NCBI GenBank assembly: GCA_002269645.1
Contig: NIVC01003604.1
Span: 1 to 64,000 of the forward strand
Reading direction: 5' to 3'
DNA length: 64,000 nucleotides
Source of the DNA: Macrostomum lignano
Lineage: Eukaryota
The translations under genes were made by a program, and so were the position numbers. The notes under the pieces are model-generated. The model had not been told where the DNA came from. It ran no database searches and saw only the letters and a program-made list of their open reading frames with translations. Below, piece after piece: positions 19,649 to 64,000 of this stretch (its first letter is position 1; each line of letters begins with the position of its first letter).

Positions 19649-19802
19649 CCCAGGCTTGATGCTAATTTTTTGGCTAAATTGGAACCTCGGCTTGGCTCTG
19701 CTCGTGAAATTAACGCCCCGAGGGCCAACCCCCAAAGCACAGTGAAGTGTACATGCCTAATGATAGATAAGGTTTAGGACCGCTGTACACTCCTGTTTGT
19801 GT
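19649..19802 (+). mobile_element. 5'-truncated copy of tRNA-derived SINE family A
   Basis: Shares GGCTTGGCTCTGCTCGTG.AATTAACG...CACAGTGAAGTGTACATGCCTAA...CCGCTGTACACTCCTGT with the copies at ~36 kb and ~50.2 kb. Confidence 0.8.
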
Positions 19803-46201: not shown

Positions 46202-48077
46202 TTACGGGCGGTCCAGATTAGGTCGAACATGCACTGGGCTTGGGTTCAAGTTCAAACTGTTTAACAATTCCATCAATTCAACTGGAGCTGTAGGCGAGAA
46301 TATCAGCACCTGAAATGATGGAGGTTCGGAGCTTTAGTCAGCGGCATGGCGTTTCTTTAAAGTGCTAGATGAACTTTTCAGGAAGTTAAAAGACGATTCT
46401 TTGATGGCTTTTGATGAGTTTTGAGGGAGATTCTTTCTTGGCTTTTGACGGCGATTCTTTCTTGGCTTTTGAGGGCGATTCTTTCTTGGCTTTTGACGGC
46501 GATTCTTTCTTGGCTTTTGAGGGCGATTCTTTCTTGGCTTTTGACGGCGATTCTTTCTTGGCTTTTGAGGGCGATTCTTTCTTGGCTTTTGAGGGCGATT
46601 CTTTCTTGGCTTTTGAGGGCGATTCTTTCTTGGCTTTTGAGGGCGATTCTTTCTTGGCTTTTGACGGCGATTCTTTCTTGGCTTTTGAGGGCGATTCTTT
46701 TTTGGCTTTTGACGGCGATTCTTTCTTGGCTTTTGAGGGCGATTCTTTCTTGGCTTTTGAGGGCGATTCTTTCTTGGCTTTTGAGGGCGATTCTTTCTTG
46801 GCTTTTGAGGGCGATTCTTTCTTGGCTTTTGACGGCGATTCTTTCTTGGCTTTTGACGGCGATTCTTTCTTGGTTTTTGAGGGCGATTCTTTCTTGGCTT
46901 TTGAGGGCGATTCTTTCTTGGCTTTTGAGGGCGATTCTTTCTTGGCTTTTGAGGGCGATTCTTTCTTGGCTTTTGAGGGCGATTCTTTCTTGGCTTTTGA
47001 GGGCGATTCTTTCTTGGCTTTTGAGGGCGATTCTTTCTTGGCTTTTGAGGGCGATTCTTTCTTGGTTTTTGTGGGCGATTCTTTCTTGGCTTTTGAGGGC
47101 GATTCTTTCTTGGCTTTTGAGGGCGATTCTTTCTTGGCTTTTGAGGGCGATTCTTTCTTGGCTTTTGAGGGCGATTCTTTCTTGGCTTTTGAGGGCGATT
47201 CTTTCTTGGCTTTTGAGGGCGATTCTTTCTTGGCTTTTGACGGCGATTCTTTCTTGGCTTTTGAGGGCGATTCTTTCTTGGCTTTTGAGGGCGATTCTTT
47301 AATGAGTTTGGTGGGCGACTCTACTAAAAATGGAATATATTGTTTTAAGGTTTAAACAAAGCACAGCCTACCTGCAAACCTTCAGGCATCTGACTAATTA
47401 TGTTAATCAGATTGTTTTTGAAACCTCGTCTAATCAAATCGTCGGTCTCAGTGAGGATTATCAATCGTATCTGAGCAGTGCTCAACCATCCTCGATTTAT
47501 TAAGTCTTCAACTCGGCCTGGGGTGCCAATCGCAATATCCACGCCTGCATCTAGCTCAGTCTTCTGATCCCGCGGCTGGGGAAATGGGATCGAACGATTC
47601 ATAAATAATTATGGGATAATTGATAGACAACGCCAATAGAACTATTCGATACGCCAAATCACAAACCTTAATACCTCCAACGCAAGCGCAACACAATACG
47701 CCCATTGATTTTCCCAGGTCATTAAACATGAATCTCGCAGATAGAGCCAACTCTCTTGACGGAGTCAGCACCAAAGCTTGAGCTGTACGACTCTGAACAG
47801 GATTGTCAGGATTTGTAGAGCTCAAACTTGGGAGTTTCACTGATTGCAGAACTGAAATTGCGGCCATAGACATCTTGCCAGTGCCAGACGGTGACTGAAC
47901 AAACACATTTTCCCCATTCAAGTACAAAGGGAAAGCTTGATTTTGAATTGTAGACAGTTCGATAAAACCATGGTTACGGATGGAGCGTTTCAGTGTATCG
48001 TTTAGTGGCAGGTCATCGAATGTGTCTGCGTTGGGACTCTGGCCAGACTTGCTAGCGGAGACCATATTTTGTTTCAT
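46202..48077 (-). CDS. Truncated eIF4A-like DEAD-box protein: RecA1 domain only, catalytic motifs altered, ~240 aa; 3 exons
   Basis: Exons 48077-47667, 47575-47372, 46309-46202. All are phase 0 with GT-AG sites and total 723 nt (241 codons). Q motif FDDL..GF..LSTIQ, motif I SPSGTGKM, Ia PSRELA, GG, Ib GTPGRV, II LTETD, III FSPT. The stop follows the segment equivalent to the eIF4A interdomain linker. Confidence 0.85.
46390..47310. repeat. 24-bp GAGGGCGATTCTTTCTTGGCTTTT minisatellite filling intron 2 of the eIF4A-like gene
   Basis: Directly visible; same family as the TEX10 intron arrays. Confidence 0.97.
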
Positions 48078-48139
48078 AATAACTGCAATATTTACACAGA
48101 ACTGAGAGTCACTAAGACACAATTTAAAAACGGCTTAGA

Positions 48140-48485
48140 GTTTAGGAGATTTTTGAAGTTTGGGGGATTTTAAAAGCTTGGGTATTTCTGAAACTTAGGG
48201 GTTTGAGAAGCTTGGGGGATTTGGGAAGCGGGGGGATTTGAGAAGCTTGGGGATTTGGGAAGCGGGGGGATTTGAGAAGCTTGGGGGATTTGGGAAGCTT
48301 AGGGGATTTGGGAAACTTGGGAGACTTGAGAAGCTTGGGGGATTTGGGAAGCTTGGGGGATTTGAGAAGCTTGGGGGATTTGGGAAGTGGGGGATTTGAG
48401 AAGCTTGGGGGATTTGGGAAGTGGGGGATTTGAGAAGCTTGGGGGATTTGGGAAGATTGGGGGATTTGGGAAACTTGGGAGATTT
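48140..48485. repeat. 18-bp G-rich minisatellite GGGGGATTTG(G/A)GAAGCTT
   Basis: Directly visible; recurs at 49060-49402 and 61760-61905. Confidence 0.95.
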
Positions 48486-48837
48486 TAATGTGAAATGTTT
48501 CACGCTAATCCATTCTTATATTTAGAGCTACCAAATGCATTCCAAACGCACAAAGTTAAAAAAGCGCTTTGAGACATTGTATTACTTATCAGCAATGAGT
48601 CAATTTTTCGTTTAATTTTTTAGCCAAAAATAGTAGGTCCAATTTATAGTAAAAACAGCACAAAAACAGTGCAGGTCTAGCGATGCTGCAGTTGGGGGAT
48701 CAGAAAAAAGTGAGAAATTTTAGCAATTTGCATGAGACCATATCAATTGTAATTTATAGTGTTATTTCAGTTATTTAAGTGTCGCAAGCTTTACTACCAA
48801 ATATATATCCGAATGAGCTTAAAAAATCACACAGTAA

Positions 48838-49052
48838 GCTTATAAAGGCCAATAGATTTTGAATTGTGACACACCGCCACGTCCGCCAGCAGCTTTAATG
48901 ATCGCCAAGCCTAACGGCTCATCGAGTTTTCTTACGTCACTGCCAGTCTGACCCTCGACTGCGACAGTCTGCAACACAGTGCCGTCACTCCGCATCAAAC
49001 AAACCACTTGCCCTGAACACTCGCTGACAAACAGCAGACCCGACCGATTTGA
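48838..49052 (-). pseudogene. 3' fragment of the Zn-finger/coiled-coil/beta-propeller gene family (copy E)
   Basis: [50 protein letters not shown] aligns to the last blade of the intact copies. It has a frameshifted end and abuts an 18-bp array. Confidence 0.85.
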
Positions 49053-49059
49053 GAAACCG

Positions 49060-49402
49060 GAGGAATTTGGGATTCGGGAAGCTTGGGTATTCAAGAAGCT
49101 TGTGGGTTTTGGGAAGCTTGGGGATTTGGAAAGCTTGGGGATTTGGAAAGCTTGGGGGATTTGGAAAGCTTGGGGGATTTGAGAAGGTTGGGGATTTGGG
49201 AAGCTTGGGGGATTTGGGAAGCTTGGGGGATTTGGAAAGCTTGGGGGATTTGAGAAGGTTGGGGATTTGGGAAGCTTGGGGCATTTGGGAAGGTTTGGGA
49301 TTTGGGAAGCTTGGGGGGATTTGGGAAGGTTTGGGCGATTTGGGAAGCTTGGGGGGATTTGGGAAGGTTGGGGATTTGGGAACCTTGGGGGATTTGGGAA
49401 GC
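49060..49402. repeat. 18-bp G-rich minisatellite GGGGGATTTGGGAAGCTT
   Basis: Directly visible. Confidence 0.95.
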
Positions 49403-50034
49403 TAGATACCCACTTTAGCAGACGCTCACTGTTCGCATGTGCCATGCGGCACACACAGCAAACATTTTGACCAAAATTTGTCAACTGTCAGTTGACATCT
49501 GAGACTATAAAATCTCATTATTGGTACTTTCCTTCAGTTTAAAAGGACAGTTAAGACAAAGTCTCGAAGTCTCAATTCACAAGCAGTGGTTCAGTTGGTA
49601 AGTGGACATAGGACTGCTCTATCAAGCTTAAGTTTGGTCGCCAGGAGGGAGGCAACTGCTTCATTTACAATTGGAAAAATTCCCGCTAATCTTAGTGACC
49701 TTTGCGCCTACCTTATTGGATTTTGAACACATAATCTGAAAATCCTTGAGATATTACTAAATAACTTTATTAACAAAGTAGTCAATTGTTCAAATATTTC
49801 TTGTAAAAAAATTGAAATAAAAAAATAATGGTTTCAGTTTAGAGAAATCAGATTTTAGCGCAGAAACGAACAAAAAGTACAAAAATAGCAAAAGAATGAA
49901 ACACTACATAAAAATAAAAAACATAAAACTTGGCAGTTGATAAAAATTGTTAATTACATTGCTGGTATTCATGTATTAGTTAAATTTCCAAATTTTGAGT
50001 AAATTCTCTTGATGAGTATCAGACATGCTAAATA

Positions 50035-50964
50035 CACTCAGCAAGTCAAAAGTTGCACCCGCTAAGCGAGATAAAAATTTTCTTTCTTATTGCGACAACT
50101 TCTCACTCACAATTCAACCCTGAAATTACGCAACTAAGCCGCCGCGAGGAAGGGAATTAAATAAAAAATAAACGTCATTCGCAGGGGGGCCGTAGCCCAG
50201 CGGTAGCGCAGCTGCTCTGGTGTGCCGCGACCCAGGCTCGATTCCAAGTGCAGTCACATTAATTTGGGGCTGAATTGGAATCCCGGCTTGGCTTGGCTCT
50301 GCTCGTGCAATTAACGGCCTTGAGAGCCAACCCCCCAAGGCGCAGTGAAGTGTACATGCCTAACGATAATATAAAGTTAGGGCCGCTGTACACTCCTGTG
50401 TGAGTGTGTGCCTGCGTAACGTATCCGCGCGCTTGTATGCCTGCTCAGTGGAGTCGGCGGAATGGGCAGCAATGCCTCTCGCCGGTTGTGTGCCTATGTC
50501 GCTTAAAGTGCGCCAGGGTGCACACAACCCCCATGCCACTAATAAAAAAAACTTCATTCGCACAAAATCATAACAATTTCTTTTTTCACGCAATATGCAG
50601 TTGGGATCGCAAAGCTAAATAACGCGTGAGATCTCCTCGCACGCAGAAGTGCGGCGACTCTGCGGGGCATCCGAAGGATGAGGCGGTGCAGAAGGTCTTG
50701 GTGAAGCTGCTGCCAAGCCTTTTCAATGGCATGACGCAGCTCCGCAAAATTCTGTGGTGGATTTTCTTTTCAAATGCTGCGTTTTAGGAAATCCCAGACA
50801 TGCTCGATCTGGGGGACCGGGAGGGCCAGCGCAGGCAGTGCGTTGTGATCCTGAACAGTCCCCCAAGTAGCAATAAGCTTCGCGCGTGCCGTAACCTGTG
50901 TCACTCGCAAAGTGAGAAAAATTCATCTCGCTTGGATGATGGAACTTTTGACTGTTGCTGAGTG
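50035..50964. mobile_element. Tc1/mariner-type MITE, 930 bp, carrying a nested SINE
   Basis: About 50-bp imperfect TIRs starting CACTCAGCAA..GTCAAAAGTT, with TA on both sides (50033-34, 50965-66). The related sequence at ~57470-57500 lacks the insert. Confidence 0.8.
50184..50525 (+). mobile_element. Full-length tRNA-derived SINE family A
   Basis: Head GGCCGTAGCCCAGCGG...GGCTCGATTCC. The body matches the 36 kb copy. A partial 3' copy also occurs at ~51225-51380. Confidence 0.85.
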
Positions 50965-51602
50965 TATATTATTATGATAGATTTTGTTACACTAACTCAA
51001 AGTAACTCACAATTTTAAGAAAGGCAAACTCATTGACTTCAAATTTAAATTCGAAAATTAGTTTGCTAAAAATTGATCAACAGCCCTGCCGATATGAGTG
51101 AAAGTTTCTAGAAGACTTGAACGGAAAAAAATATCGCATAACTGCATACCCTCTAAGCAATCTAAACACAGACCTACGTAGGCAATCAAAAACTTTTATG
51201 AAGTTACGAGCTAAGTTACGAGCTAACCCCCAAGGCACAGTGAAGTGTGCATGCTTAGCGATAAATAAAATTAGGGTCGCTGTGTGTGAGTCTGCTCAGA
51301 AGAGTCGGCTGAATGCTCAACAATGTCTCTCGCCGGTTGTGTGACAGTACCGATTAAGGTGCGCCAGGGTGCACACAGTCACTGCTTTTAAAACTCTCCG
51401 AATGAAAAATTTAGCCCTAGAAATAACCTAAAACAACTGTACTGACTAACTCATATTACTAACATCTAACAGCCTATAACTAAGACAGAGCTAATTAATG
51501 AAAATTTTCAAGGAACGAAATTAAATGTAGATAAAAAACAACTGAATAACGCATCAAAGAAGCTTAAAATAGTAAACAGATCAGAATGAATGAACTAAAA
51601 AG

Positions 51603-53123
51603 TTACACAGTCAACTTATACAATCCAATTAATTTTGAATCTTGACACACCGCCAGCAGCTTTGGGCTTTCTTCAATGATCGCCAAGCCAAATGGGCTAT
51701 CAACTTTACTCATACCACTGCCAGCCTCACCCTCGACTCCGACAGTCTGCAGCACAGTGCCGTCACTCTGTATCACACGAACTACATGCCCTGAATTCTC
51801 ACTGACACACAGCAGACCTGACCAATGAGTCGCGACACCAACAGGTCCACGAAGCTTGTCAAGACGACTTTGCTTAGTCGGGTAGGTCGAGATCAGCTGA
51901 TCGCTGGCGAGACACACTTTGTAGAGCTTGCCACCTTCATAGTCAGCCAGTAGCAGCGCGTTGTCAATTACAGACATGCCCTCCATGAATTTACCAGGGT
52001 TACCGACACCGACCAATGTGATTTTGGTCTGAAGCTGACCGCTGTCTTTATCGATGCACAGCACTGACCATTCCGGGCTGCCTTTGCTCAAAGCAAATAT
52101 CTTGTCAGAGCTGCAGGCCAAGGCAAATAATTTGACTGGATGACCCAGGCTGCTCGAGTTGAAAGCCTGCGTCACGCGGCCGCTGAGGTCCGTCACCTTC
52201 AAAGTACCATAGTCAGCGACATAAAGAGTCTGTCGCTTGCTGTCACAGCAGAGTCCAGCGACAGGTTTTGAGACATCAATGTCGAGCTGTAGTTGCGCTT
52301 TCACTAAGCCATCAACTGAGCAGGCAAGAAGGTAGTTTATCTTATTTTTAGGATGAAAACTAACGAAGAGACACGGCTGTGGCAGCTCTCTGTCAGAGAC
52401 CTCCTTGACCACCTTGCTCTGAGAATCCACGTAGAAGTCTTGCGTGTTGCTGCATGATGACACATAATATGGAGAACCCGGTAGATCTTTGATTTCAGAC
52501 TGAAATTCAAAAATTGGTTTTTCTGCACTAAGAGACTCTGCTGACCCGCACAGCTGCATCACATCAATCAGGTGTCTGTCAATCAGCAGCTGCAAGTCCC
52601 TCACACAGCCGCTCACATCGCCCACAGTCCTTCCAATGCCTCTCTTAGAGTTTTCGGTAATGATCGGGCCAAACATCGTCTGCAACTCTTCACTCCTAAT
52701 ATCGAATGCGCTAGAAATTTCAAACATCTTATTGAAGTCATTGTGCTTTTCTGCTTCCGTCACTTCTCGCTCATACTCCTGCAGAGCGGACAACTGCTGC
52801 AGATTCTGCAACACGCTGTCGTGTCTCTCAGTCAGTCGCTTTGTCACAGCTGCCTTCCACTTAATCAGCGAGTCCACAGCCGACTCAAACAGCTCCTCAG
52901 TCTCTTGCAGCTCAACTGACAGAGCTTGCTGCTGCATCCGAAATTCTTTCTGCAATTTTAGAAATGGCTTCAGCTTTCCCTGCATATTTTTGTACAGAAC
53001 TCGCACAATTTCTCTGTCCTGCTCAATGTGTTTCTCACACAATGGCTGTGGGATTCGAAAACCAGTGCCACATACGGGATCGGTGCAGCCTTTAATAAAG
53101 CAAGAAGTGCTCCGCTCCGACAT
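51603..53123 (-). CDS. Zn-finger/coiled-coil/six-bladed beta-propeller (NHL/SGL-like) protein, RING-less TRIM-like (copy A), 506 aa, single coding exon
   Basis: Intact ORF. C-x4-C-x15-C-x2-H N-terminus, heptad-rich helix at aa ~55-135, and blade motifs [57 protein letters not shown]. Confidence 0.85.
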
Positions 53124-53539
53124 TGAGTTGCAACTGAAATATGATATTATAGTAAGTTTTATACAGAAATTGTAAAGCCATTTTTTGACAGAAAGCTATA
53201 ACTGGTGTGAATCACAGATACTATAAACACTAGATAGGCCACTCCAGCTAATTTTCACAACACGACAGTTTACTTTACTTTCTGCTTAGTAGTAGTAAAA
53301 ACATTTTAGCGTTATTTATATTTTTTAAAAATAAAAAAACAGATGAATGCAATGCAGCAATTATATTGATTTTATTTGCAAAAAGAAACTTATAATTATA
53401 CTTTCCACAATTCAAAGCAACATTGTGAATGCTTTAGATTGCATTGAAGGCTATATTATTGCAGTCAACTATTGTATATTTAGCAAATACGAGCTATATC
53501 ATATACTCCATAATCCATATTCGTGTAGCAAAATAGAAA

Positions 53540-54575
53540 GATTTCTCATCTTAATCAGCTCATCTGTTTGTGAAACTCGCAGCGTGCTGTCGAAGAACAG
53601 GGGGTCGCCAGTCACTCTTGTTCAGAGGCAGCATTCAGCACGGCCCAACAGATAAAAAAAACTGGCGAATGCGCCTCTTCTAAGTCCAGGGATGTATCCG
53701 ATGGAGAGCCAATCCTCAGTGGTTTCGTAACAGGCAGCTGATAAGCAGCAGGACTTTTGTGGTGCAGCTGCAATGAGCTGCTGATGAGATGACATCCTTT
53801 GACCAGAGCACCCCTGACTGCGAGCGCCCTGCCGCCCAGTCGACCGCTGGAAGCTGCGCTATAGCCACGCCTCAAAAGTCCATGGATGCACGACTGCGCT
53901 GTACTTGCCTTGACCATCGAGAGTTGCTGCTGCAGCCGCTTGATTTGCCTGTCGCTTTCGGGATTGCTGCTGCAGCCGCTTGATTCGCCTGTCACTTTCG
54001 GGATCGTTGCTGCAGCCGCTTGATCGTTGCCTCTAGCGCTTGGAACCCGCAAATCGGCTGCAGAGGTGAGAGCTTTCAGCCGCAACAGCTGTTCTCGGCG
54101 CAGAATCTGGTAGCCGAAGGTTGCTCTGCCACAGCACTGGCAGCAGGCAAGTCGCAGGCTCGGCTGCAGATAGATTGCTAATAGGCCCCAGCACTGGAGG
54201 GTACATGTCGTCTGCCTCTTCATCGTTTATCAGTCCTTTGCACAGAGCTGGTAGCTGGTCTATTTGAACGAGCCGAGGCAGCATCAACTCTTGGTGTGGG
54301 ATTGCGTCCCAGCGAAAACAGATGTCTTGCACATCCGTGGCACTTTGTAAGGCAGCAGTAGGCCTCGTCCATAAAGTGCAAGCTGAACACACGTAGGCCC
54401 CGTGATTTAATTGTTTATAAAGGTCAATATCCACGCTCCTGCAGTAGCTGCTGCCAGCGCTTCGCCAGTGTCATCTTTTGGTAATTTATGCATTCGCAAC
54501 GGATTGTTCTTTCTCGGATGTTAATAGCACTAGTACAGAGCTCGTGCAAGTGGGAGCACAGCAGTGGTTCGAATC
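53540..54575 (-). pseudogene. Decayed THAP-domain / P-element-superfamily transposase relic
   Basis: Fragments in shifting frames rebuild a THAP domain: NHCCAPTCTS ... MHKLPKDD ... KRWQQLL ... AYVCSA ... WDAIP. A coiled segment follows, then LQLHHKSPAAYQL, resembling the P-transposase LHFYSPKAY region. Several frameshifts and stops. Confidence 0.7.
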
Positions 54576-54682
54576 AAAACATTTCTCGAGTACGAGATTA
54601 GATAGAAAAGCTAGTATGCACTCGAACTTTCTTTAACTCTGAATCTTGTCCTGTTCATCTATATATAAGCTTGTATTTAAGC

Positions 54683-56228
54683 TAGGGGGCGACCCAGTCC
54701 CGGGCCCGGGCCCGAAAAGTCGGGAATCCCGACCAAAATCGTGGCCCGACCCGGGCCCGGGCCCGACCCTAAAAAAGTCGGGAAATCGGGACAAGTCTTT
54801 TTTCCCTAAAGGCACTAACCGCGTGCGAATAAGAATAAAATTATTTTTATTCACAGCACAGCACAACACTCAGTTAAGCATCGCATCAGCACTCAAGACT
54901 CAAGCACTGCACGACTGCAGTAATAGTAATAGATGATATGATGTGAAGTAGCAATATCATTGATTTGTAGTATGCTCTTAGCGTGAGCGTCTGTGACTGT
55001 GACCGTGAGCGTCAGCCACAGCCAGTTTCCACTTTCCAGGAAGATCGGATTTTTTCCAGGAAGATAAAATTAAAACATAGTTTTGCAATACTTTTTTGCA
55101 ATATTGATTCCACTTTACACGCTGCAGGCTGCAGCCTAAAAGCAAAAATATGATTCTTAAAAAAGTTGATTTGTCAATTTTAAGCTTTTGTAAATAACAT
55201 TTCCTATTTACATTCCAAGAAGTACCTATTAAGGGCCAAGGCTACCATTTTTCCAAGAAGTTTGCTATCTGTCAGAGTTTGTAATCGTGTTCATATTTGT
55301 ATTGTATTCGTAGGTAGTTGTAGTCGTAGACTCATAGTATCATATTCGTAATCATATTCGTTTAGGTAGGTAGGTGAGCAGGTAGGCAGGTATCAGCTAA
55401 TTACTTGTATTTCCATTGTCTGTTTGCCTGTTCTGTTGAGACAGTTGAGTGTTGTGTTGTGTTGTCACTTCACTTGTGTTCTGTTCTGTTGTCTTGTCTT
55501 GTTGTCTTATTGAATACTGACTGTGTACATGGCTCTTTACATTGAAGCTATGTAAAGGAACTAAAAATTCAAATAAAAGAATCAATCAATTGATTTGGTT
55601 CTTACTTCCTTATTGCTTCCAATGCCAAGTGCCTTACACTTAATGCTTCAGCTTTTCTTCTTTTTGATTACTGCCACTGCCAGTGCCAGCCGCACTACCG
55701 CAGTGCCTGCTTGCCTACCTCACTGCCTATTAGTGTCACTGTCACTGGCACACACACAGTACTTGTGCCACACAGTGACATTGAATTTGAACTATTGGGT
55801 ATATTGATATTTGAGTATTAAGTCTTTTAATGTAACTCTTATCTATTCTGAAGTCTTAACTAATGTATTAAATAAAAATAATATTTATTATATTATATAT
55901 TTAATATATATTTAATTTAATATATTATATTTATTATATTTATATTATTATATATTCAATATATTTATATATTATAATATATTTAATGTTTATCATATAT
56001 TTATTATACATTTAATATATTATATTAGATTTAATATATCTATATATTTATTATATATTTAATAGTAATCTGCATATGCTAAAAGTATTAAGATTTATTA
56101 TGATTTTTTTTCCAATTATTGAGCTGTCCTAAAGATCTTGTCCCGAATTCCCGAGGCCCGACCCGGGCCCGAGTCCTCATTCCCGGGCCCGACCCGGGCC
56201 CGACTTTGGCTGTCCCGGTCGCCCCCTA
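54683..56228. mobile_element. Non-autonomous hAT DNA transposon, 1546 bp
   Basis: Perfect 12-bp TIR TAGGGGGCGACC and exact 8-bp TSD ATTTAAGC (54675-82, 56229-36). Subterminal CCCGGGCCCG/CCCGAC repeats at both ends, an AT-rich interior at 55860-56062, and no transposase. Confidence 0.92.
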
Positions 56229-58253
56229 ATTTAAGCACGATTCGCCACCCCCAAATTTTCTAAACCACAACCTCTCAACCCCCACCCCTAACGCAGGCTG
56301 GCTATGTCCAGTCCTTTATTTTCTATCCCACCACCAGTGGGCCTAAATTATCGATCCACTCACCCTGCCTTATACGAAACTGATATTAACCCTATTCCAG
56401 ACTACCCCCCTTCCTCCACTTTGAAAGATAGCGGCATTGTACACTGTCTGTCGCGTCTTAATGTACACCATTACTGCACAAAACAAGTTAGTTGTTTATG
56501 GCGTTAGCAAAACGATGTCTCAAAAACAGTCACTTGATTTGTCTAATTTAGCAAATAATACTGTTGCTTCCTTTCATTGCTACTAAGCAGAAAGTAGAAT
56601 AAAAAACTTGCCCAGAAAATTAGCCTGAGTGGCCTATCTAGTGTTTATAGTATCTGTGGTGTGAATAGTACCTTTGAAATCTGCAAACTCTGATTTCATC
56701 TTTTCAACAGAGCCACAGAGAGTGACTTAAAGAGAGGGCAATTCACAACTTAAAGTTAGCATCCCATTTTATTGCGCATTGCAGATACAGCTGAGACCAG
56801 AAAATCTCACGAGTCACACCCTCCTTCATGTTGGAAGGGCAGTTAAGACGAAGTCTATTATTCTCAATTCGCAATTAAGATGTCCAGTTGTTCAACAGAA
56901 ATGACAAATGCACATAGCCGTAGCAACGGGCAGGACTGTTCTATCAAACTTAAGTTGGTCCCCAGGAAGAAATTTCGGTTAAGGGAACGAGGACTTTCTA
57001 GCAACAGGCACTTAAACAGCCGACTGGGACAATTCAAGCTTGTTGTAAAAGTTCCGGACATTCTTAAAAAGGCCTAACCTTCATCTATATTGTGAACTAT
57101 TTGACGCTCATCTAGTTACCTTTGAACCACCTAATGGATTCCAAACACAGAAACTGAAAATAACAACAGCTTGAGACATTGCAGAACTTTATTGACAAAT
57201 CAGTCAATTGTTTGTATATTTCTTGTCAAGACTTTGTAGCTAAAGAAGTGGACAAATTTAGAGAGAACAGATTTAGCAAAGATACATAAACGGCCATCTA
57301 TAGCGCAGTTATGGAAACATGTAAGGATCAGAAAAAAAAGAAAAGTCGGAAAGTTGGCAATTACTAAAAATGTTTGTATCCATTACTCATATCTCTACAT
57401 ATAAAAAGCAAATCTTTGTATAAAGTTAAATTTCTAAAATTTCATAAATTTCTCTGCATAAAAACCAGACGTGCTGTATCGATTATTCTGATAGATTTTG
57501 TTATAAGTTTATAACAACTCAAAATATTTCAAAACTTCGAGACGGCCAAACTCATAGCTTGCGAATTTCAATCCAAAAATTAATTCGCTCAAAATGGATT
57601 CAGAGTCTCGCTGTTGTTACAAGTAAAAAATCTTATATAATTGAACGGAAGAATACTCGTATATTGAGGCGGAAGGCCTTTTAGTTTCAATAGATGGAAT
57701 GGCAGCGAAGATTTTGCACTGCATTGCGCGTATATTTATACAAGTGAAAACAGCGCGAGATTATTGAGTGGCCAAGGGAGGTGCGCATATGTGGCGTGGC
57801 GTGATTGGCTACGCCAACCTCCCTTGGCTTAGCGAGCCGGCTAGCGCGGTGCGCCACCACCCCACCTCAGCTAGACAGAGGTTGGCGGGGGGGTTTCCAG
57901 TGCGGCTGCACTGGTGCTGCCGGTCGCGTAGTCTGGCCGCCACAATATTCAGAAAATAATATTCTTAAAATTGCCCGTGTAAGCATTCCATAGCACCAGA
58001 TTCCTAGTAGATTCATAGATTTACTCTAGGAGAAAAAATATCTTAAAAACAGCTCTACTAATAATGCACATATTTGCACCCACGATAATTTTAAAAACAA
58101 CTGTACCGACTACTCATAACCCTATACTACTGTTACTAGTAACTAACAGTACACAACAACTTTAACAGAACACTAATACTAATGACATGTAAAAAACCAC
58201 ATTGAGGGTGGATGAAACAACAATTAACACCCACACCAAATAAGATTCGCAAA

Positions 58254-58700
58254 CTACGAACAGATGCGAATAAACTTTAAAATTACAGTCAACTTATAAA
58301 GGCCAATCGATTGTGAATCTTGACACACCGCCAGCAGCTTAGGGCTACCTTCAATGATCGCCAAACCGAATAAGTCAGCAATTTCATCACCGTCACTGCC
58401 AGTCTGACACTCGACTTCGACAGACTGCAGCACAGTGCCGTCACTCCGCATCAAACGAAGCACCTGCCCATCACACTCGCTGACAAACAGCAGACCCGAG
58501 CGATGAGCCGCGACACCAACAAGTCCACGAAGCTTGTCAAGACGAATTCGCTTGGTCAGGTAGGTCGAAATCAGCTAACTGCTGGCCAGACAAACTTTGT
58601 AGAGGTTGCCACCGGCATAGTCGGTGAACAGCAATGCGTTTTCAATTACAGACATGCCATCTGTAAATTTACCAGAGATACGGACACCAACCAAGGTATT
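58254..58700 (-). pseudogene. 3' fragment of the beta-propeller gene family (copy D)
   Basis: [42 protein letters not shown]... aligns to the last blades. It has an in-frame stop, a lost native stop and no 5' part. Confidence 0.85.
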
Positions 58701-58968
58701 TTAAAGATTAGGATATTTAAGAGAGATGTATTATAAAAATGTCACAATTAATGAAACACTTTGAAAACATGGTGACCCTCTAATACAACTGTATACTGTA
58801 CTCACAACTCATAATATGAGGAATAAACAGCACAAAATAACTCTAACAGAATGCGAATACAATGAAGCGTCAATTAACGACATTAACGGTACATACGCTC
58901 ATAAAACAACAATTAACAGAAACGTCGAAAATAGTTTACGGCCCACGTAGGGATAAAAAAACAAAAAA

Positions 58969-60495
58969 TTACATAGTAAGCTTATAAAGGCCAATTGAAC
59001 TTAAATTTTGACACACCGCCAGAAGCTTGGGGCTTTCTTCAACGATTGCCAAGCCCAATGGGTCATCAATGTCATCACCGTCACTACTGTCAGCCTCACC
59101 CAATACTTTTACCGTCTGCAGCACAGTGCCGTCACTCTGCATCAAACGAACCACATGCCCTGAACGCTCGCCGACAAACAGCAGACCCGACCGATGAGCC
59201 GCGACACCAACAGGTCCACGAAACTTTCCCAGAGAACTTCGCTTGGAAGGGTAGGTTGAGATCAGCTGACCACTGGTAAGACACACTTTGTAAAGCTTGT
59301 TAGCCGCAAAGTCAGTAAGCAGCAGGGCATTGTCAACTACAGACATCATGCCCTGAGTAAATTTATCAGAGATACTGGCTGTAACCAAAGTAATGTTGGT
59401 CTGCAGCTGACCGCTGTCTTTATCGATGCACAGCACTGACCATTCTGGTTTGCCTTTGCTCAAAGCAAATATCTTGTCAGAGCTGCTGGTCACGGCAATA
59501 AAGTTAACTGGCCGTCCCAGGTTGCTCGAGTTGAAGACCTGCGTCACGCAGCCGCTGAGGTCCGTCACTTTCACTGTATCAAACTGAGCAACATAAAGAG
59601 TCTGTCGCTTGCTGTCACAGCAGAGTCCAGCGATATTATTTGCGATATCAATGTTTAGCTGAACTTTTGCCTTTACTTTGCCGTCGACTGAGCAGGCAAA
59701 AAGGTAGTTCATCTTATTATTAGGACGAAAACTAACGAAGAGACACGGCTGTGGCAGCTCTCTGTCAGTGGGCTCCTTGACCACCTTGCTCTGAGAATCC
59801 ACGTAAAAGCCTTGCGTGTTGCTGCATGATGACACATAATATGGAGTTCCTGGCAGATTTTGTATTTTAGACTGAAACTCACAGATTGGCTTTTCTGCAG
59901 TAAGAGGCTTTTCTGACTCGCACAGCTGCATCACATCACTCAGGTGTCTGTCAATCAGCAGCTGCAAGTCCCTCACACAGCCGCTCACATCGCCCACAGT
60001 TCTTCCAGTGCCTCGCTCAGAGTTTTCTTTACCAGTATGGCCGAATTTGACCAGAAACTCTTCACTCTCAATATCAAATGCGACAGAAATCTCAAACATC
60101 TTATTGAATTCATTGTGCTTTTCTGCTTCCGTCACTTCTCGCTCATACTCCTGCAGGGCAGACAACTCCTGCAGATTCTGCAACACGCTGTCGTGTCTCT
60201 CAGTCAGTCGCTTTGTCACAGCTGCCTTCCACTTCATCAGCGAGTCCACAGCCGACTCAAACAGCTCCTCAGTCTCTTGCAGCTCAGCTGACAGAGCTTG
60301 CTGCTGCATCCGAAATTCTTTCTGCAATTGCGAAAAAGTTTTCAGTCTTAGCTGCATACAACTGTGCAACTGATAAGCCTTTTGTCTGTCTTGCTTGAGA
60401 TGATTCACACACAGAGGCTTTGGGATTCGAGCACCGGTGCCAGACACAGGAGCGGTGCAGCTTTTGATAAAGCAAGAAGTACTCGGCTCCGACAT
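58969..60495 (-). CDS. Zn-finger/coiled-coil/beta-propeller protein (copy B), 508 aa, single coding exon
   Basis: Intact ORF, colinear with copy A along its whole length. Confidence 0.87.
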
Positions 60496-60973
60496 TGAGC
60501 TGTAACTGAAAATATGATATTATAGTAAATTTAATATAGGAATTAAAAAGCCATCTTTTTTAAAGCAAAGCTGACTTGTATGAAAAATACATCAGAATAC
60601 ATCAATCTGAACTCTGTTAAAGCTGACTTCAGCACTCTCATATGGCGGAGTCGTCAGGAAAGTTCATAAACGGAGTAACTGGGTTTTGATAAAAATATCT
60701 CTATTTATGGCACAGTGTGTTGAAGACAAAGCCTAGCTTAGCTCTTCACTTTGCTATACTCTGTCTGCACCAAGGATGACTAAATAATACATTTCTGCTA
60801 TCAGCCCATTTCTGATGACAAGACGTTTTAATGAGACACGTTTGAGGACTTTTAGACTTTGAATTGAAAGTATGGGAATTTTACAATCGGGAAAGTTGGA
60901 GACCAAGCTTTGTCTTTAGACTAAAACAAATAAATTCAGATAAAAAGACTTTCGTTTTGTAGATTTCAATATA

Positions 60974-61676
60974 CGAAGGGGTGTCCAGAAAGTTCTGACA
61001 CTTTTAATTCCAGAGCAAAAATAGTAGCAGACTGCAAGCACAACTTTGGGTAACTTCTCGTCTTCTCTTCTCCAATGAATTAAAATGCGTGTAGTTTTGT
61101 CATTTCTTTAAAAAGTTGTGTGACAAATAATTGAAATACCACTGATACGCTAGTAGTCTTACAGAAAAGGTTAAAAATATAAAATTTATGTTTTATACTC
61201 AAAGAAACGAACTGTAGTCATTCATTTCCATCAATAACCTTCAAAGCAGCCTTCTCAACATAGTCTCCACCTGTAGCAACACACTTTTCCATCGCTTGAG
61301 CATTCCGTCAATCGCATCAGAATAGCATATTGTCTTGAAAGACCATAGGAGAGAATGTGCCGAACCTTTTCTTCCAAATGATCCATTGCTGGAGTAAACT
61401 TCTCTCCCCCTCTCCTCTCTCTCCTTTCCTCTCCTATCCTCTCCTCTCCCCTCCCATCCTCTCCTCTCTCTCCTCTCCTTACTCCTCCCGCAATCCTACT
61501 GGCATTGCGATGGTTTTTCACACATAACTTTTAAATAAAATTATCAAAACAAGCGCGACTGAATTCATTGGAGAGAAGAGATGTGCCGCTTTATATTGAC
61601 ACCCAAGTCGTGCTTGCAGTCTGTTACTGTTTATGCTCTGGGATTAAAAGTCTCACAACTTTCCGGATACCCCTCG
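60974..61676 (-). mobile_element. Internally deleted mariner element, 703 bp
   Basis: About 80-bp imperfect TIRs starting CGA(A)GGGGT.TCC.GAAAGTT, with TA on the left and TG on the right. The interior reads MDHLEEKVRHILSY (mariner N-terminus-like) joined to KRW/KCVATGGDYVE (mariner C-terminal signature). Confidence 0.85.
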
Positions 61677-61759
61677 TGAAATATTTCAGGCGTCCAACTT
61701 TGCGAGTAAAAAATAGATATTCGTCAGGGAAAGTTTAACAAAAGATTTGATCAGAATTC

Positions 61760-61905
61760 GAGAAGCTTGGAGGATTTGGGAAGCTTGGGGGATTTGGGAA
61801 GCTTAGAGGGTTTGGAAGCTTGGAGGATTTGGGAAGCTTGGGGGATTTGGGAAGCTAGAGGGTTTGGAAGCTTGGAGGATTTAGGAAGCTTAGGGGGTTT
61901 GGGAA
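61760..61905. repeat. 18-bp G-rich minisatellite GG(A/G)GGATTTGGGAAGCTT
   Basis: Directly visible. Confidence 0.92.
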
Positions 61906-62796
61906 GCTAGATAACCACCTAAGCATCCACTATTGGCATCGACATATGGAGCAAACGGCAGGCCTTTCGGCAAAGCATTGGCTCTCAAGTGTCGCACTCT
62001 CCTTCAGTTTGGAAGGACAGTTTAGACGAAGTCTCAAATCCTCAATTCGCAAGTCGTCCAGTTGCTCAGTTGTAAATGCATCGCATGGGTATAGGAATAG
62101 GACTGCTCTATAAAACTTAAAGTTGGTACCCAAGAGGAAGCCTACTTCTTTATTTTTAAGTGAAATATTTCACGATAACTCTAGTCACATTTGAACCTAC
62201 CTAACGCATTCCAAACACAGGAACTGAAAGAAACACCGCGAAAAATTGCATAATGTATCAGAAAATTAGCAAATTATACAGTTCGTTTATTTTTTAGCTA
62301 AAATAGTAGATCAAATATGGAAAAACATATTTTAGCGCAGAAAACAACAAATAGCATAAAATTTGGCACGTCTAAGGTTTCAGGAAGAAAAGAATCACAG
62401 TATGCAATTTTTTAAAAAATTGTTGATTGCACTTCTCGTATTCATTTCTGAACTGAATTTCCAAATTTCGAGAAATTCCTCAAGCTCAAAAAATCAGTCT
62501 TCTAATTTAAATAAAAAATTATTTGTTAAAAAGTAATCACAGCTCTACCGATACGAGTGAAAATTTTCTGGAAGATTTAAACGGAAAAATACTCATAAAA
62601 TGCATCAGGCAAGCAGTCTTATGGCATTATACATGTAAATTAGTCACAGCACATAAAGCAAGTTTATCTTGGTACTCGAAGTAAACAAAATTATACTCTT
62701 CAAGCAAAAACTGCGTGCCGGATAAACCGTACTGACTACTGATAATAGATGTACAAAGACAGCATTAGAATTATAAAATGAAGTCAAATGAACAAC

Positions 62797-64000
62797 TTAC
62801 ACAGCGTCAAAAAAGCTTACAATGTAATTATCACGAATGTATAATGAACTTAAATAATTATACACACTAAGCTTATAAATGCCAATCGATTTTAAATTTT
62901 GACACACCACCAGCAGTTTAGGGCTTCCATCAACGATTGCCAAGCCCAATGGGTTGTCAAGTTTTCTTCCACCACTGCCAGTCTGACCTTCGACTGCGAC
63001 AGTCCGCAGCACAGTGCAGTCACTCTGCACCAAACGAACCACATGCCCTGAACTCTCGCTGACAAACAGCAGACCTGACCGATGAGCCGCGACACCAACA
63101 GGTCCACGAAACTTTTCAAGAGGGCTTCGCTTAGTAGGGTAGGCTGAGATCAGCTGACCGCTGGTGACACATTGTAGAGCTTGCCACCTTCATAGTCAGT
63201 GAGCAGCAGTGCGTTGTCAATTACAGACATGCCCTCGACATATTTACCAGAGGAACTAATACCAACCAAGTTAATTCTGGCCAGCAGCTGACCGCTGTCT
63301 TTATCGATGCACAGCACTGACCATTCTGGTTTGCCGTTGCTCAAAGCAAATATCTTGTCAGAGCTGCAGGCCAAGGAAAAAGTTGACTGGCCCTCCTAGG
63401 TTGCTCGAGTTGAAGACCTGCGTTACGCAGCCGCTCAGGGCCGTCACCTTTACTTCATCAAACTGAGCGACATAAAGAGTGTGTCGCTTGCTGTCACAGC
63501 AGAGTCCTACAACAGTTTTTGAGGTATCAATGTAGAGCTGCAGCCCGGCTTTCACTAAGCCCTCGATTGAGCAGGCAAGGTGGTTTATCTTATCATTAAG
63601 ATGAAAACTAATGAAGAGACACGGCTATGGCAGCTCTCTGTCAGGGCCCTGTTTGACCACATTGCTCTGAGAATCCACGTAAAAGCCTTGCGTGTTTCTG
63701 CATGATGACACATAATATATGGAGAACCCGGCAGATCTTTTATCATAGATTGAAACTCACAGATTGGCTGATCTGCACTAAGAGACTCTGCTGACTCGCA
63801 CAGCTGCATCACATCACTCAGGTGTTTGTCAATCAGCAGCTGCAAGTCTCTCACACAGCCGCTCACATCGCCTACAGTCCTTCCAGTGCCTCGCTCAGAG
63901 TCTTCGGTAATAGACGTGCCAAATACCATCTGTAACTCGTTACTCTCAATATCGAATGCGCCAGAAATCTCAAACAGTTGAGATTTCAGCGAGTCCACAG
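62797..64000 (-). pseudogene. Disrupted beta-propeller family copy C; the 5' end lies beyond the right edge
   Basis: Colinear with copies A and B but with several small indels (e.g. extra AT near 63715), a net 43-codon deletion in the coiled coil, and TAA changed to TAT at the native stop. Some indels could be read errors. Confidence 0.75.

What the first reader, a model, noticed from the sequence alone, without database searches (positions are those of the whole stretch)
48838..64000. Birth-and-death cluster of RING-less TRIM-NHL-like genes with variable propeller loops: candidate innate recognition family
Seen: five loci (fragment E, intact A, fragment D, intact B, disrupted C). Between A and B the ~85-aa coiled-coil core differs at only about four residues, and blade strands are conserved. 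Short loop segments differ in every copy (A/B/C): VSKPVAG/IANNIAG/TSKTVVG; ADYGT/AQFDT/AQFDE; [28 protein letters not shown]; ADYEGG/TDFAAN/TDYEGG; SENSG/GERSG/SESSG; DSPFG/DDPLG/DNPLG; QDSKL/QNLSS/QNLKS. Known: in NHL propellers these loops form the ligand-binding top face, which binds RNA in Brat and LIN-41, and TRIM restriction-factor clusters diversify their C-terminal recognition domains. Inference: a lineage-specific sensor family under diversifying selection, with a non-canonical C-x4-C-x15-C-x2-H finger in place of RING/B-box.
Basis: partly seen in the sequence, partly recalled or inferred. Interest (0 to 1): 0.72.

Follow-up and report, generated by a model that had tools for sequence, protein, structure and literature searches.

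The report
Flatworm tandem array of NHL-propeller genes
This is part of a tandem cluster of genes, so far seen almost only in the flatworm Macrostomum lignano, that encode zinc-knuckle, coiled-coil and six-bladed propeller proteins; the copies duplicate, decay and swap segments, and their variable loops lie on the usual ligand-binding face but change at a neutral rate, not a positively selected one.

Summary
Window 48.8-64 kb holds two intact intronless genes (A 506 aa, B 508 aa, 75% identical), one frameshifted copy (C) and two 3' fragments (D, E), all on the minus strand. The window is Macrostomum lignano contig NIVC01003604.1. The array runs on to about 81 kb (ten loci in all) and has a colinear counterpart on another contig.

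Each protein has a conserved C-x4-C-x15-C-x2-H knuckle, about 165 aa of long helices and a six-bladed NHL propeller. Pfam detects no RING or B-box.

Birth-and-death evolution is supported. Variability is concentrated on the top-face loops (omega 0.84-0.99, against 0.27-0.41 for bottom loops and strands, p about 1e-8 to 1e-11). Diversifying selection is not shown: top-loop omega does not differ from 1, and M2a against M1a is not significant (p=0.23 for the whole gene, LRT 0 for the propeller).

The "conserved coiled coil" is conserved at the DNA level (pS 0.02-0.10 against 0.18-0.34 elsewhere). It is not specially conserved between subfamilies, and gene-conversion tracts are pervasive, so recent homogenisation explains it.

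An immune role is untested. The family is undescribed: a TRIM-NHL-like variant of moderate interest.

The parts
48830..49088 (-). Fragment E: a 3' remnant of a family gene (equivalent to aa ~416-506), split over two frames. Its 5' side is replaced by an 18-bp satellite.
   Evidence: tblastn; sequence. It is positionally equivalent to the fragment at L001 13940-14164 on the colinear contig, within a 96.5% identical block.
49069..49403 (.). 18-bp satellite (GGGATTTGGGAAGCTTGG, about 19 copies) abutting fragment E. Related arrays lie at 48148-48485 and 61762-61908.
   Evidence: TRF; self-blastn.
51603..53123 (-). Gene A: intact intronless ORF of 506 aa. It encodes a zinc knuckle (aa 8-32), long helices (aa 30-193) and a six-bladed NHL propeller (aa 205-506).
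   Evidence: ORF; identical to a transcript-based GenBank protein P0001; AF2 models; pN/pS 0.49 against its nearest relative, p=3e-6.
53028..53102 (-). Codons 8-32 of A: the C-x4-C-x15-C-x2-H knuckle.
   Evidence: C8, C13, C29 and H32 are invariant in 14 divergent relatives. Modelled as a beta-hairpin leading into helix 1, pLDDT about 92. No Pfam domain.
52719..52943 (-). Codons 61-135 of A: the homogenised coiled-coil core, nearly identical in DNA across the copies where it is present (partly deleted in pseudogene C).
   Evidence: pS 0.02-0.10 against 0.18-0.34 in the rest of the gene. Tree length 0.31 against 1.5-3.6 substitutions per codon. One sequence type among the 11 copies that retain it. 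Not specially conserved between subfamilies. No Rfam hit, and RNA fold z=-0.95.
51606..52511 (-). Codons 205-506 of A: six-bladed NHL beta-propeller with variable top-face (D-A and B-C) loops.
   Evidence: 25 strands, pLDDT about 76-93. Foldseek TM 0.74-0.76 to the TRIM71, TRIM3, TRIM2 and Thin NHL domains. phmmer E about 1e-8. Class omegas.
53124..53212 (-). Upstream block of about 90 bp shared by A, B and P0003. It holds a TATAAT-like motif and a TTTTCAG acceptor-like site 12 nt before the ATG.
   Evidence: Alignment; limits of DNA similarity. Reading it as a promoter or trans-splice acceptor is inference.
58284..58697 (-). Fragment D: a 3' third of a family gene (aa 369-506) with an in-frame stop, lying directly downstream of B.
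   Evidence: tblastn; translation; tandem partial duplication 58145-58698 against 58826-59392.
58969..60495 (-). Gene B: intact intronless ORF of 508 aa, the most divergent copy of the subfamily.
   Evidence: ORF. 75% aa and 84% nt identity to A. pN/pS 0.55-0.58 against its nearest relatives, p about 1e-5. Top-loop pairwise omega 1.06-1.34 in three of the four B pairs computed, 0.69 in B-G2.
62863..64000 (-). Pseudogene C. It runs off the window and ends at about contig 64244. It has at least three frameshifts and an apparent gap of about 135 nt in the core.
   Evidence: tblastn pieces in alternating frames; gap at A-nt ~271-405. Its 5' half is 94-98% identical to the intact P0003 on the colinear contig.

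Best explanation
Window 48.8-64 kb is the proximal part of a tandem array of about 32 kb (contig NIVC01003604.1, about 48.8-81 kb) of intronless Macrostomum lignano genes. They belong to a large superfamily that in the databases searched is almost confined to M. lignano. Each gene encodes a protein of about 506 aa with no obvious signal peptide (by eye). The parts are a four-ligand C-x(2,4)-C-x(15-17)-C-x2-H zinc knuckle, about 165 aa of long helices (H1 30-126, H2 130-160, H3 169-191) and a six-bladed NHL beta-propeller. This is a TRIM-NHL-like layout without a detectable RING or B-box. Shown: the array evolves by tandem duplication and unequal crossing-over, by pseudogenisation, and by frequent gene conversion between paralogues. 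The result is mosaic genes. Three blocks (aa 61-135, 166-195, 346-360) are kept nearly identical in DNA, while the segments between them exist in 6-11 sequence types among 12 copies. The intact copies are under purifying selection overall (omega about 0.35-0.6). Within the propeller, the scaffold (strands and bottom loops) is constrained (omega 0.27-0.41), and the top-face loops change at the neutral rate (omega 0.84-0.99). Inferred: the proteins dimerise through the long helices, as TRIM proteins do, and present two propellers whose top faces bind a ligand (protein or RNA). Lacking a RING, they act as adaptors, sequestering factors or repressors rather than as E3 ligases. The homogenised helix core would keep paralogues able to pair with one another. 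The copies differ mainly in the binding face and in two helical segments, so the array encodes a set of related binders with different surfaces. Whether that variety is used (immunity, reproduction, RNA control) or merely tolerated is not decided by the data.
For: Five loci in the window and five more further along the contig. The closest homologues and the 18 relatives whose source was checked by name are all M. lignano proteins; two further groups come from metagenome contigs. About 30 clusters at 50% identity, judged by eye from the hit list. Other subfamilies also sit in tandem arrays with fragments. Fold: AF2 propeller pLDDT about 76-93 with 25 strands; TM 0.74-0.76 to the TRIM71, TRIM3, TRIM2 and Thin NHL domains; phmmer E=1e-8. 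Knuckle invariant in the 14 aligned relatives and modelled with confidence. Coding constraint: pN/pS 0.49-0.58, p about 1e-5 to 1e-6; M1a puts 56% of sites at omega 0.135. Top face against the rest: omega 0.99 against 0.29 and 0.41, LRT 37.7 and 45.6. After refining blade 1: 0.84/0.95 against 0.27/0.33/0.41, and the short B-C loops differ from the short bottom loops at p=2.5e-7. The same pattern holds across the superfamily (entropy 2.6 against 1.8 bits). Gene conversion: 18 of 55 pairs have significantly long identical runs, and the nearest neighbour changes along the gene. The downstream flank of A is 95.8% identical to that of P0003, yet the two coding sequences are only 88.9% identical. 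Unequal crossing-over: relative to this contig, the colinear contig carries a single hybrid gene (P0003) where C, B, D and A lie here. The GenBank gene models are transcript-based (PMC5730564).
Against: Nothing bears directly on function: there are no expression, localisation or ligand data, and the literature and supplement searches found nothing on the family. The N-terminal region has no significant sequence or fold match to TRIM coiled coils or B-boxes; the best Foldseek hit, the KAP1 RBCC domain, has E=0.8. Dimerisation is therefore an analogy. The top loops are roughly charge-neutral (net -2 to +2), unlike RNA-binding NHL domains (PMC4015489). Half the loci are dead, and 44-48% of sites fit omega=1, so part of the family may be decaying. 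The codon-model code is my own (NJ trees per segment, relative branch lengths fixed) and was not checked against PAML or HyPhy.
Confidence: 0.65

Rival explanations
1. One reading: a lineage-specific intracellular recognition (innate-immune or restriction-factor-like) family whose propeller top face is under diversifying selection, as in the TRIM5 or fish finTRIM clusters.
For: Tandem array with rapid turnover. Variability sits on the canonical ligand-binding face and persists across subfamilies. Top-loop omega reaches 1.06-1.34 in three of the four pairs computed with B. The M2a point estimate puts 8.7% of sites at omega 1.7. Gene conversion that spreads variants is also typical of immune multigene families.
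Against: No significant omega>1 class (p=0.23; LRT 0 for the propeller using intact copies only). Pooled top-loop omega is 0.84-0.99 and cannot be told from 1. No RING effector domain. No induction or expression data were found. With only 8-10 recombining sequences, power is low, so this view is not excluded.
Confidence: 0.2
2. Redundant paralogues under relaxed constraint. The loop variability is neutral drift on unconstrained surface loops of a propeller whose function lies elsewhere (for example the bottom face, or a scaffold role), and the array is slowly decaying.
For: Top-loop omega is about 1, not above it. M1a fits as well as M2a, with 44-48% neutral sites. Six of the ten loci on this contig are pseudogenes or fragments. 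The D-A loops are also the low-confidence parts of the model.
Against: The short B-C loops (3-7 residues) are as variable as the long D-A loops and differ sharply from the equally short bottom loops (p=2.5e-7). The variability is therefore specific to one face and not simply a property of loops. The architecture and open reading frames persist down to 44% identity and below, in many subfamilies. Two helical segments are also hypervariable, in discrete shared types.
Confidence: 0.3
3. The identity of the coiled-coil core reflects a functional nucleotide-level element (an RNA structure, a small-RNA target, an antisense gene or an internal regulatory site) and not gene conversion.
For: The boundaries of the identical block (aa 61-135) are the same in every pair compared, which is unusual for random conversion tracts. 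Antisense ORFs of 115 aa overlap the region in both A and B.
Against: No Rfam match in 48-64 kb. The predicted RNA structure is ordinary (z=-0.95). Between subfamilies the block is no better conserved than the rest (nt identity 0.58-0.66, pS 0.53-0.68). Antisense ORFs are expected from coiled-coil codon usage (my own knowledge). Conversion tracts are demonstrably frequent elsewhere in the same genes.
Confidence: 0.1
4. Assembly artefact: the copies are collapsed or duplicated haplotypes of one or two genes in a redundant polyploid assembly.
For: The Mlig_3_7 assembly is known to be redundant (PMC5730564). G1 on this contig is 99.8% identical to a copy on contig NIVC01000989.1, and the two contigs are colinear.
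Against: Copies within this single contig are only 82-90% identical in DNA, with different flanks, spacing and states of decay. Redundancy explains the second contig, but not the array itself.
Confidence: 0.03

Closest known systems
TRIM-NHL proteins (LIN-41/TRIM71, TRIM2, TRIM3, TRIM32/Thin, Mei-P26, NHL-2)
   Same: A C-terminal six-bladed NHL propeller: the best structural matches have TM 0.74-0.76, and the only significant sequence matches in the PDB are these proteins. The propeller is preceded by a long helical coiled-coil region. An N-terminal zinc-binding motif leads straight into the helix.
   Different: No RING and no B-box detectable by Pfam, only a four-ligand CCCH knuckle. The Pfam NHL score is below the curated cut-off (18 against 20 bits). 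The genes are intronless and sit in tandem arrays of many paralogues with pseudogenes; known TRIM-NHL genes number 3-5 per genome (PMC4015489). The top loops are not electropositive.
Drosophila Brat (a TRIM-NHL protein without a RING)
   Same: It lacks a RING yet is functional, acting through the top face of its NHL domain as a repressor and not as an E3 ligase (PMC4015489). It is a precedent for a RING-less coiled-coil-NHL protein.
   Different: Brat keeps two B-boxes, is a single conserved gene, and has a strongly positive top surface that binds RNA. None of these holds here.
Clustered, fast-evolving TRIM recognition families (primate TRIM5/TRIM22, fish finTRIM) - my own knowledge, not tested here
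   Same: Tandem clusters with gain and loss of copies. Variability is concentrated in the loops of the C-terminal recognition domain. A coiled-coil dimer scaffold.
   Different: Those families have a RING and a B-box, a B30.2/SPRY recognition domain instead of NHL, and demonstrated omega>1 at loop sites. Here omega is about 1 and no effector domain is present.
Multigene families shaped by birth-and-death together with gene conversion between paralogues (for example MHC genes) - my own knowledge
   Same: Mosaic genes, conserved blocks next to polymorphic segments, differences in copy number between haplotypes, and pseudogene members that share segments with intact genes.
   Different: No evidence here of balancing or diversifying selection, or of any role in recognition.

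Membership tests
TRIM (RBCC) family | N-terminal RING finger with eight zinc ligands (C3HC4) | tested here: not met
   Only four conserved ligands (C8, C13, C29, H32). No RING family in Pfam, even at E<=10. No upstream extension with a RING in any relative read. UniProt's automatic name 'RING-type domain-containing' for some relatives appears to rest on this half-motif.
TRIM (RBCC) family | One or two B-box zinc fingers | tested here: not met
   No zf-B_box hit in Pfam for A, B or five divergent relatives. The profile search of the N-terminus against PDB sequences finds only coiled-coil noise. One relative carries UniProt's automatic name 'B box-type', so descent from a B-box remains possible but is not shown.
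TRIM (RBCC) family | Long antiparallel coiled coil after the zinc fingers | tested here: inconclusive
   AF2 predicts helices 30-126, 130-160 and 169-191 with pLDDT above 90, a TRIM-like layout. Foldseek gives no significant match (best hit KAP1 RBCC, E=0.8). The dimer state was not modelled.
NHL-repeat six-bladed beta-propeller | Six blades of four strands, with NHL sequence motifs | tested here: met
   25 strands between aa 205 and 504. TM 0.74-0.76 and rmsd 4-5 A to the TRIM71, TRIM3, TRIM2 and Thin NHL domains. phmmer E=1.3e-8 to 2.8e-8. The Pfam NHL repeat matches at 18 bits, just under the 20-bit cut-off.
RNA-binding TRIM-NHL subgroup (Brat, LIN-41) | Electropositive top surface that binds RNA | tested here: inconclusive
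   Net charge of the top-loop residues is -2 to +2 in eight copies. This is a residue count and not a surface potential. RNA binding cannot be tested with these tools.
Gene family under diversifying selection | A class of codons with omega significantly above 1 | tested here: not met
   M2a against M1a with segment-specific trees: LRT 2.98, p=0.23. Propeller only, intact copies: LRT 0. Top-loop omega 0.84-0.99, and omega=1 is not rejected. Power is limited (8-10 sequences, custom code).
Gene family under diversifying selection | Variable sites concentrated on the ligand-binding surface | tested here: met
   Top D-A and B-C loops against strands, p=1.4e-11; against bottom loops, p=8e-10. Short B-C loops against short bottom loops, p=2.5e-7. 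The definition of the top face is taken from PMC4015489.
Birth-and-death multigene family | Tandem paralogues of differing age, together with pseudogenes and copy-number change | tested here: met
   Four intact copies, three near-full-length pseudogenes and three fragments on this contig. The colinear contig has a different number of copies.

The most novel reading that the evidence does not exclude
The array works as a germline 'cassette' system. The DNA-identical blocks (aa 61-135, 166-195, 346-360) serve as homology anchors. Through them, unequal crossing-over and gene conversion reshuffle a limited set of divergent helix segments (aa 16-60, 136-165) and propeller loop sets among paralogues, pseudogenes included. 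This would generate and maintain a combinatorial repertoire of intracellular binders that can hetero-dimerise through the shared core. It would be a flatworm-specific recognition system built on an NHL scaffold.
Probability: 0.12. Interest if true: 0.75.

Novelty: new variant of a known kind. Interest (0 to 1): 0.45.

Why it matters
If these proteins are used as a repertoire of binders, the family would be a recognition family built on the NHL propeller instead of the SPRY, LRR or Ig scaffolds. It occurs in a regenerating flatworm in which RNAi and transgenesis are available. It would also be a natural experiment on how far the top face of an NHL domain can vary. Even on the plain reading it has two uses. 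It is a clear case in which apparent protein conservation (the coiled-coil core) is really DNA homogenisation. It also shows that variability on a binding face can be mistaken for positive selection when omega is simply about 1. Finally, several GenBank gene models in the array are chimeras of neighbouring paralogues, which matters for anyone using the annotation.

Tried and rejected
1. An RNA element in the homogenised core: no Rfam match in 48-64 kb, and the fold is unremarkable (z=-0.95). Rejected as unsupported.
2. A transposon or virus origin of the copies: the ORFs between A and B have no Pfam domain. The flanks are ordinary and are shared with the colinear contig. Poly(A) tails and target-site duplications were not looked for. 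Rejected.
3. Classifying the N-terminal knuckle: Pfam at E<=10 gives only noise. The profile search against PDB sequences gives only coiled-coil noise. Foldseek of a confident N-terminal model finds nothing below E=0.8. Left unclassified.
4. Literature and expression data: searches by gene identifier, by 'NHL' and by 'TRIM' with Macrostomum found nothing on the family. The supplements of PMC5816591 and PMC5730564 list only the neighbouring PDCD2 gene.
5. A single-tree site-model test was deliberately not used, because recombination is pervasive. Segment-specific trees were used instead.
6. G2 was first treated as intact, then dropped from the selection tests once its frameshift near aa 465 was seen.
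7. Mapping variable sites onto 3-D coordinates was not possible, because model files are not exposed. Strand topology was used instead.

Full report
**Where the window comes from**

The translated ORFs of the region match only hypothetical proteins of the free-living flatworm Macrostomum lignano. A locus fetched for one of them overlaps the window base for base. This shows that window coordinates equal positions 1-64000 of contig NIVC01003604.1 (88,471 bp, assembly GCA_002269645.1). That assembly is known to be repeat-rich and redundant, because the sequenced line carries duplicated chromosomes. Its GenBank gene models come from a genome-guided transcriptome (PMC5730564).

**Checking the observation**

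tblastn with A and B finds five loci between 48.8 and 64 kb, all on the minus strand, and none elsewhere in the window:
- E lies at 48830-49088. It covers aa ~416-506 in two frames, and its 5' side is replaced by an 18-bp satellite.
- A lies at 51603-53123 and is an intact 506-aa ORF.
- D lies at 58284-58697. It covers aa 369-506 and has one in-frame stop.
- B lies at 58969-60495 and is an intact 508-aa ORF.
- C lies at 62863 to beyond 64000. Its pieces fall in alternating frames, so it has at least three frameshifts.

A and B are 75% identical in protein and 84% in DNA. The DNA similarity stops about 80-90 bp upstream of the ATG and a few bases after the stop codon. The four differences in the coiled-coil stretch, the CCCH motif and the quoted loop strings all check out, apart from one string of C that I did not read.

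**The cluster is larger than the window**

Loci fetched around the relatives show that the array continues to about contig position 81,000. The additional loci are:
- two more intact genes, G1 and G4 (G4 is P0005);
- a copy with a frameshift near aa 465 (G2);
- a copy with a single premature stop;
- one more 3' fragment.

A second contig, NIVC01000989.1, is colinear with this one at 92-99.7% identity and carries the same array with a different number of copies.

The downstream flank of A (window 49069-51001) and fragment E are 96% identical to the flank that follows the gene for P0003 on the other contig. The upstream flank of P0003 corresponds to the upstream flank of pseudogene C, and the 5' half of P0003 is 94-98% identical to C. 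So where this contig has C, B, D and A, the other has one hybrid gene. This is the footprint of a recent unequal crossover. Birth-and-death evolution is therefore well supported.

**What the genes encode**

Pfam gives only a sub-threshold NHL repeat (18 bits against a cut-off of 20). phmmer against PDB sequences matches the NHL domains of Thin, TRIM71 and TRIM2 (E about 1e-8 for Thin and TRIM71, about 1e-5 for TRIM2). An AlphaFold2 model predicts 25 strands from aa 205 to 504 with pLDDT about 76-93. That is six four-stranded blades closed by the N-terminal strand. Its best structural matches by TM-score are the NHL domains of TRIM71, TRIM3, TRIM2 and Thin (TM 0.74-0.76).

A second model, of aa 1-210 alone and built on 14 divergent relatives, is confident (mean pLDDT 87). 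It shows a small beta-hairpin that carries the cysteines, running straight into a 97-residue helix, followed by two shorter helices.

The four ligands C8, C13, C29 and H32 are invariant in that alignment. The spacing across the superfamily is C-x(2,4)-C-x(15-17)-C-x2-H, and one member has Tyr in place of His.

No RING or B-box is detected by Pfam, by a profile search of PDB sequences or by fold search. The top Foldseek hit, not significant at E=0.8, is the KAP1 RBCC domain. UniProt's automatic names for some relatives ('RING-type' and 'B box-type') seem to rest on this half-motif. They are a lead towards a degenerate TRIM N-terminus, not a test.

No relative that I read has an upstream RING extension. 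The transcript-based models start within a few codons of the ATG. A conserved TTTTCAG lies 12 nt upstream of it.

**Size and distribution of the family**

A profile search of 1.8 billion representative proteins found about 30 clusters (at 50% identity) with the full architecture or large parts of it. The remaining hits were generic multi-repeat NHL proteins. The 18 relatives whose source names I checked are all from M. lignano. Two further groups come from short JGI metagenome contigs; one of these was traced to sample 3300040775. Those contigs probably derive from related animals.

Two other subfamilies that I fetched also lie in tandem arrays with fragments. Other Macrostomum genomes are not in the databases, so "lineage-specific" means "not seen outside Macrostomum-like sources".

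**Is the coiled coil conserved by selection on the protein?**

No.
- In every pair compared, synonymous divergence in codons 61-135 is 0.02-0.10, against 0.18-0.34 in the rest of the gene. Fisher p is below 0.05 in 20 of 21 pairs, with a median of 9e-4.
- Under M0 with segment-specific trees, the tree length of this segment is 0.31 substitutions per codon, against 1.5-3.6 elsewhere. Its omega (0.29) is not exceptional.
- Between subfamilies the block is no better conserved than the rest (aa identity about 0.5, pS 0.53-0.68).
- It carries no Rfam match and no unusual RNA structure.
- A Sawyer-type runs test finds significantly long identical tracts in 18 of 55 pairs.
- The nearest neighbour of A and of B changes repeatedly along the gene.
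- At a threshold of 94% nucleotide identity, the variable segments fall into 6-11 types among 12 copies, shared in a reticulate way. Codons 61-135, 166-195 and 346-360 form one or two types.
- A and P0003, which are positional counterparts, differ by 11% in the coding sequence but only 4% in the flank. Only sequence imported from other paralogues explains this.

The helical region is also not uniformly conserved. Codons 16-60 and 136-165 are among the most divergent parts of the gene, with only 52-72% nucleotide identity between most copies.

**Are the loops under diversifying selection?**

By definition, the B-C and D-A loops of an NHL propeller form its top surface, which is the RNA-binding face of Brat (PMC4015489). 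I assigned strands from the model and fitted one omega per structural class, using segment-specific trees.
- First fit: top loops 0.99, bottom loops 0.29, strands 0.41. Top equal to strands is rejected at p=1.4e-11, and top equal to bottom at p=8e-10. Top equal to 1 is not rejected (p=0.93).
- After refining blade 1: D-A 0.84, B-C 0.95, A-B 0.27, C-D 0.33, strands 0.41. The short B-C loops differ from the equally short bottom loops at p=2.5e-7.
- The same face is the most variable across the superfamily (entropy 2.6 against 1.8 bits).

So the variable sites are not scattered. They lie on the expected face. There is, however, no class of sites with omega above 1.
- M2a against M1a gives LRT 2.98 (p=0.23) for the whole gene.
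- It gives LRT 0 for the propeller when only intact copies are used.
- The data fit 52-56% of sites at omega 0.14 and the remainder at omega 1.
- Pairwise top-loop omega exceeds 1 only in three of the four comparisons involving B (1.06-1.34).

The intact genes are under purifying selection overall (pN/pS 0.49-0.58, p about 1e-5 to 1e-6).

Caveats: the set is small (8-10 recombining sequences). The codon-model code is my own, with NJ topologies and fixed relative branch lengths. The face assignment comes from strand order and not from coordinates.

**Function**

Nothing tested here speaks to an immune role. I found no paper or supplementary table that mentions these genes. The proteins have no obvious signal peptide (by eye) and no E3 domain. 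The top-loop residues are about charge-neutral, whereas RNA-binding NHL domains are electropositive on that face (PMC4015489).

My best reading is a family of dimeric, RING-less coiled-coil-NHL adaptors whose copies differ mainly on the binding face. The homogenised helix core possibly keeps the paralogues compatible with one another. Whether the variety is exploited or merely tolerated remains open.

**Comparison with known families, and verdict**

The closest known kind is the TRIM-NHL family, and Brat is the precedent for a RING-less member. Membership of TRIM fails on the RING and on the B-box. It is inconclusive for the coiled coil and is met for the NHL propeller. The tandem-array, mosaic mode of evolution resembles clustered TRIM recognition families and MHC-like birth-and-death families, but without the signature of positive selection. 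I rate this a new variant of a known kind. It is real and undescribed, and of moderate interest (0.45).

Noticed in passing
window 58284-58697 after B; 48830-49088 after A; L003 20028-20591 after G4; L001 6820-7493 and 13940-14164 after full copies: A recurring pattern: a full-length gene followed 0.3-2.5 kb downstream by a 3' fragment of another copy. This suggests that the ancestral duplicated unit was 'gene plus 3' fragment', or that unequal crossovers recur within the propeller-coding part.
   Followed up: partly
L003 10001-14644 (P0006) and L004 10001-15302 (P0002): Two GenBank gene models look like chimeras that splice neighbouring paralogues together. P0006 joins the 5' part of the frameshifted G2 to the copy with a premature stop. 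P0002 repeats a segment of about 50 aa. The annotation in this array should not be taken at face value.
   Followed up: partly
window 52572-52919 (+) and 59944-60291 (+): Antisense ORFs of 115 aa overlap the coiled-coil coding region in both A and B. They are probably a by-product of coiled-coil codon usage (few antisense stops) and not genes.
   Followed up: no
window 53124-53212 and 60496-60576 (minus strand): The only conserved non-coding sequence around the genes is about 90 bp upstream. It has a TATAAT-like motif about 24-30 nt before the ATG and a TTTTCAG acceptor-like site 12 nt before it. Gene identifiers such as Mlig001567.g1 (PDCD2) and g3 (a family member) share one transcriptional-unit prefix, which hints at polycistronic transcription with trans-splicing.
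   Followed up: partly
window 48148-48485, 49069-49403, 61762-61908: Three arrays of the same 18-bp satellite (GAAGCTTGGGGGATTTGG) are interspersed in the gene array, and one truncates fragment E. They read through as long PNPPSF-like ORFs that are not genes.
   Followed up: partly
window 44000-45541 (16-bp unit), 46419-47300 (24-bp unit); also 12.5-13.9, 24.6-25.2, 27.7-29.6, 31.7-32.8 and 36.5-37.7 kb: The window is rich in satellite arrays that produce long spurious repeat ORFs on both strands and strong local GC and AT skews.
   Followed up: no
window 47345-48122 (-): Two ORF pieces match the DEAD/DEAH-box helicase domain (E=3e-12 and 8e-9). This is probably a helicase gene split by an intron, or a decayed one, directly beside the array.
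   Followed up: partly
window 26367-27488 (-) and 31128-31661 (-): The ORF at 26367-27488 matches Peptidase_M24 (Pfam, E=7e-32). The ORF at 31128-31661 looks by eye like another piece of the same gene. If so, the pieces are separated by about 3.6 kb that includes a 1.9-kb satellite (27.7-29.6 kb), i.e. a satellite-filled intron.
   Followed up: no
window 50188-50518 against 35968-36289 (inverted); 50268-50405 against 19672-19802: Dispersed repeat copies (about 81-83% identity) lie between E and A and recur elsewhere in the window. Probably a short interspersed element; not classified.
   Followed up: no
L005 (JGI metagenome 3300040775, contig Ga0450778_159907): Clear members of the superfamily (P0012; P0021 from a separate JGI/IMG cluster whose sample was not traced) occur on short environmental contigs. 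This suggests the family exists in other, unsequenced Macrostomum-like animals.
   Followed up: partly
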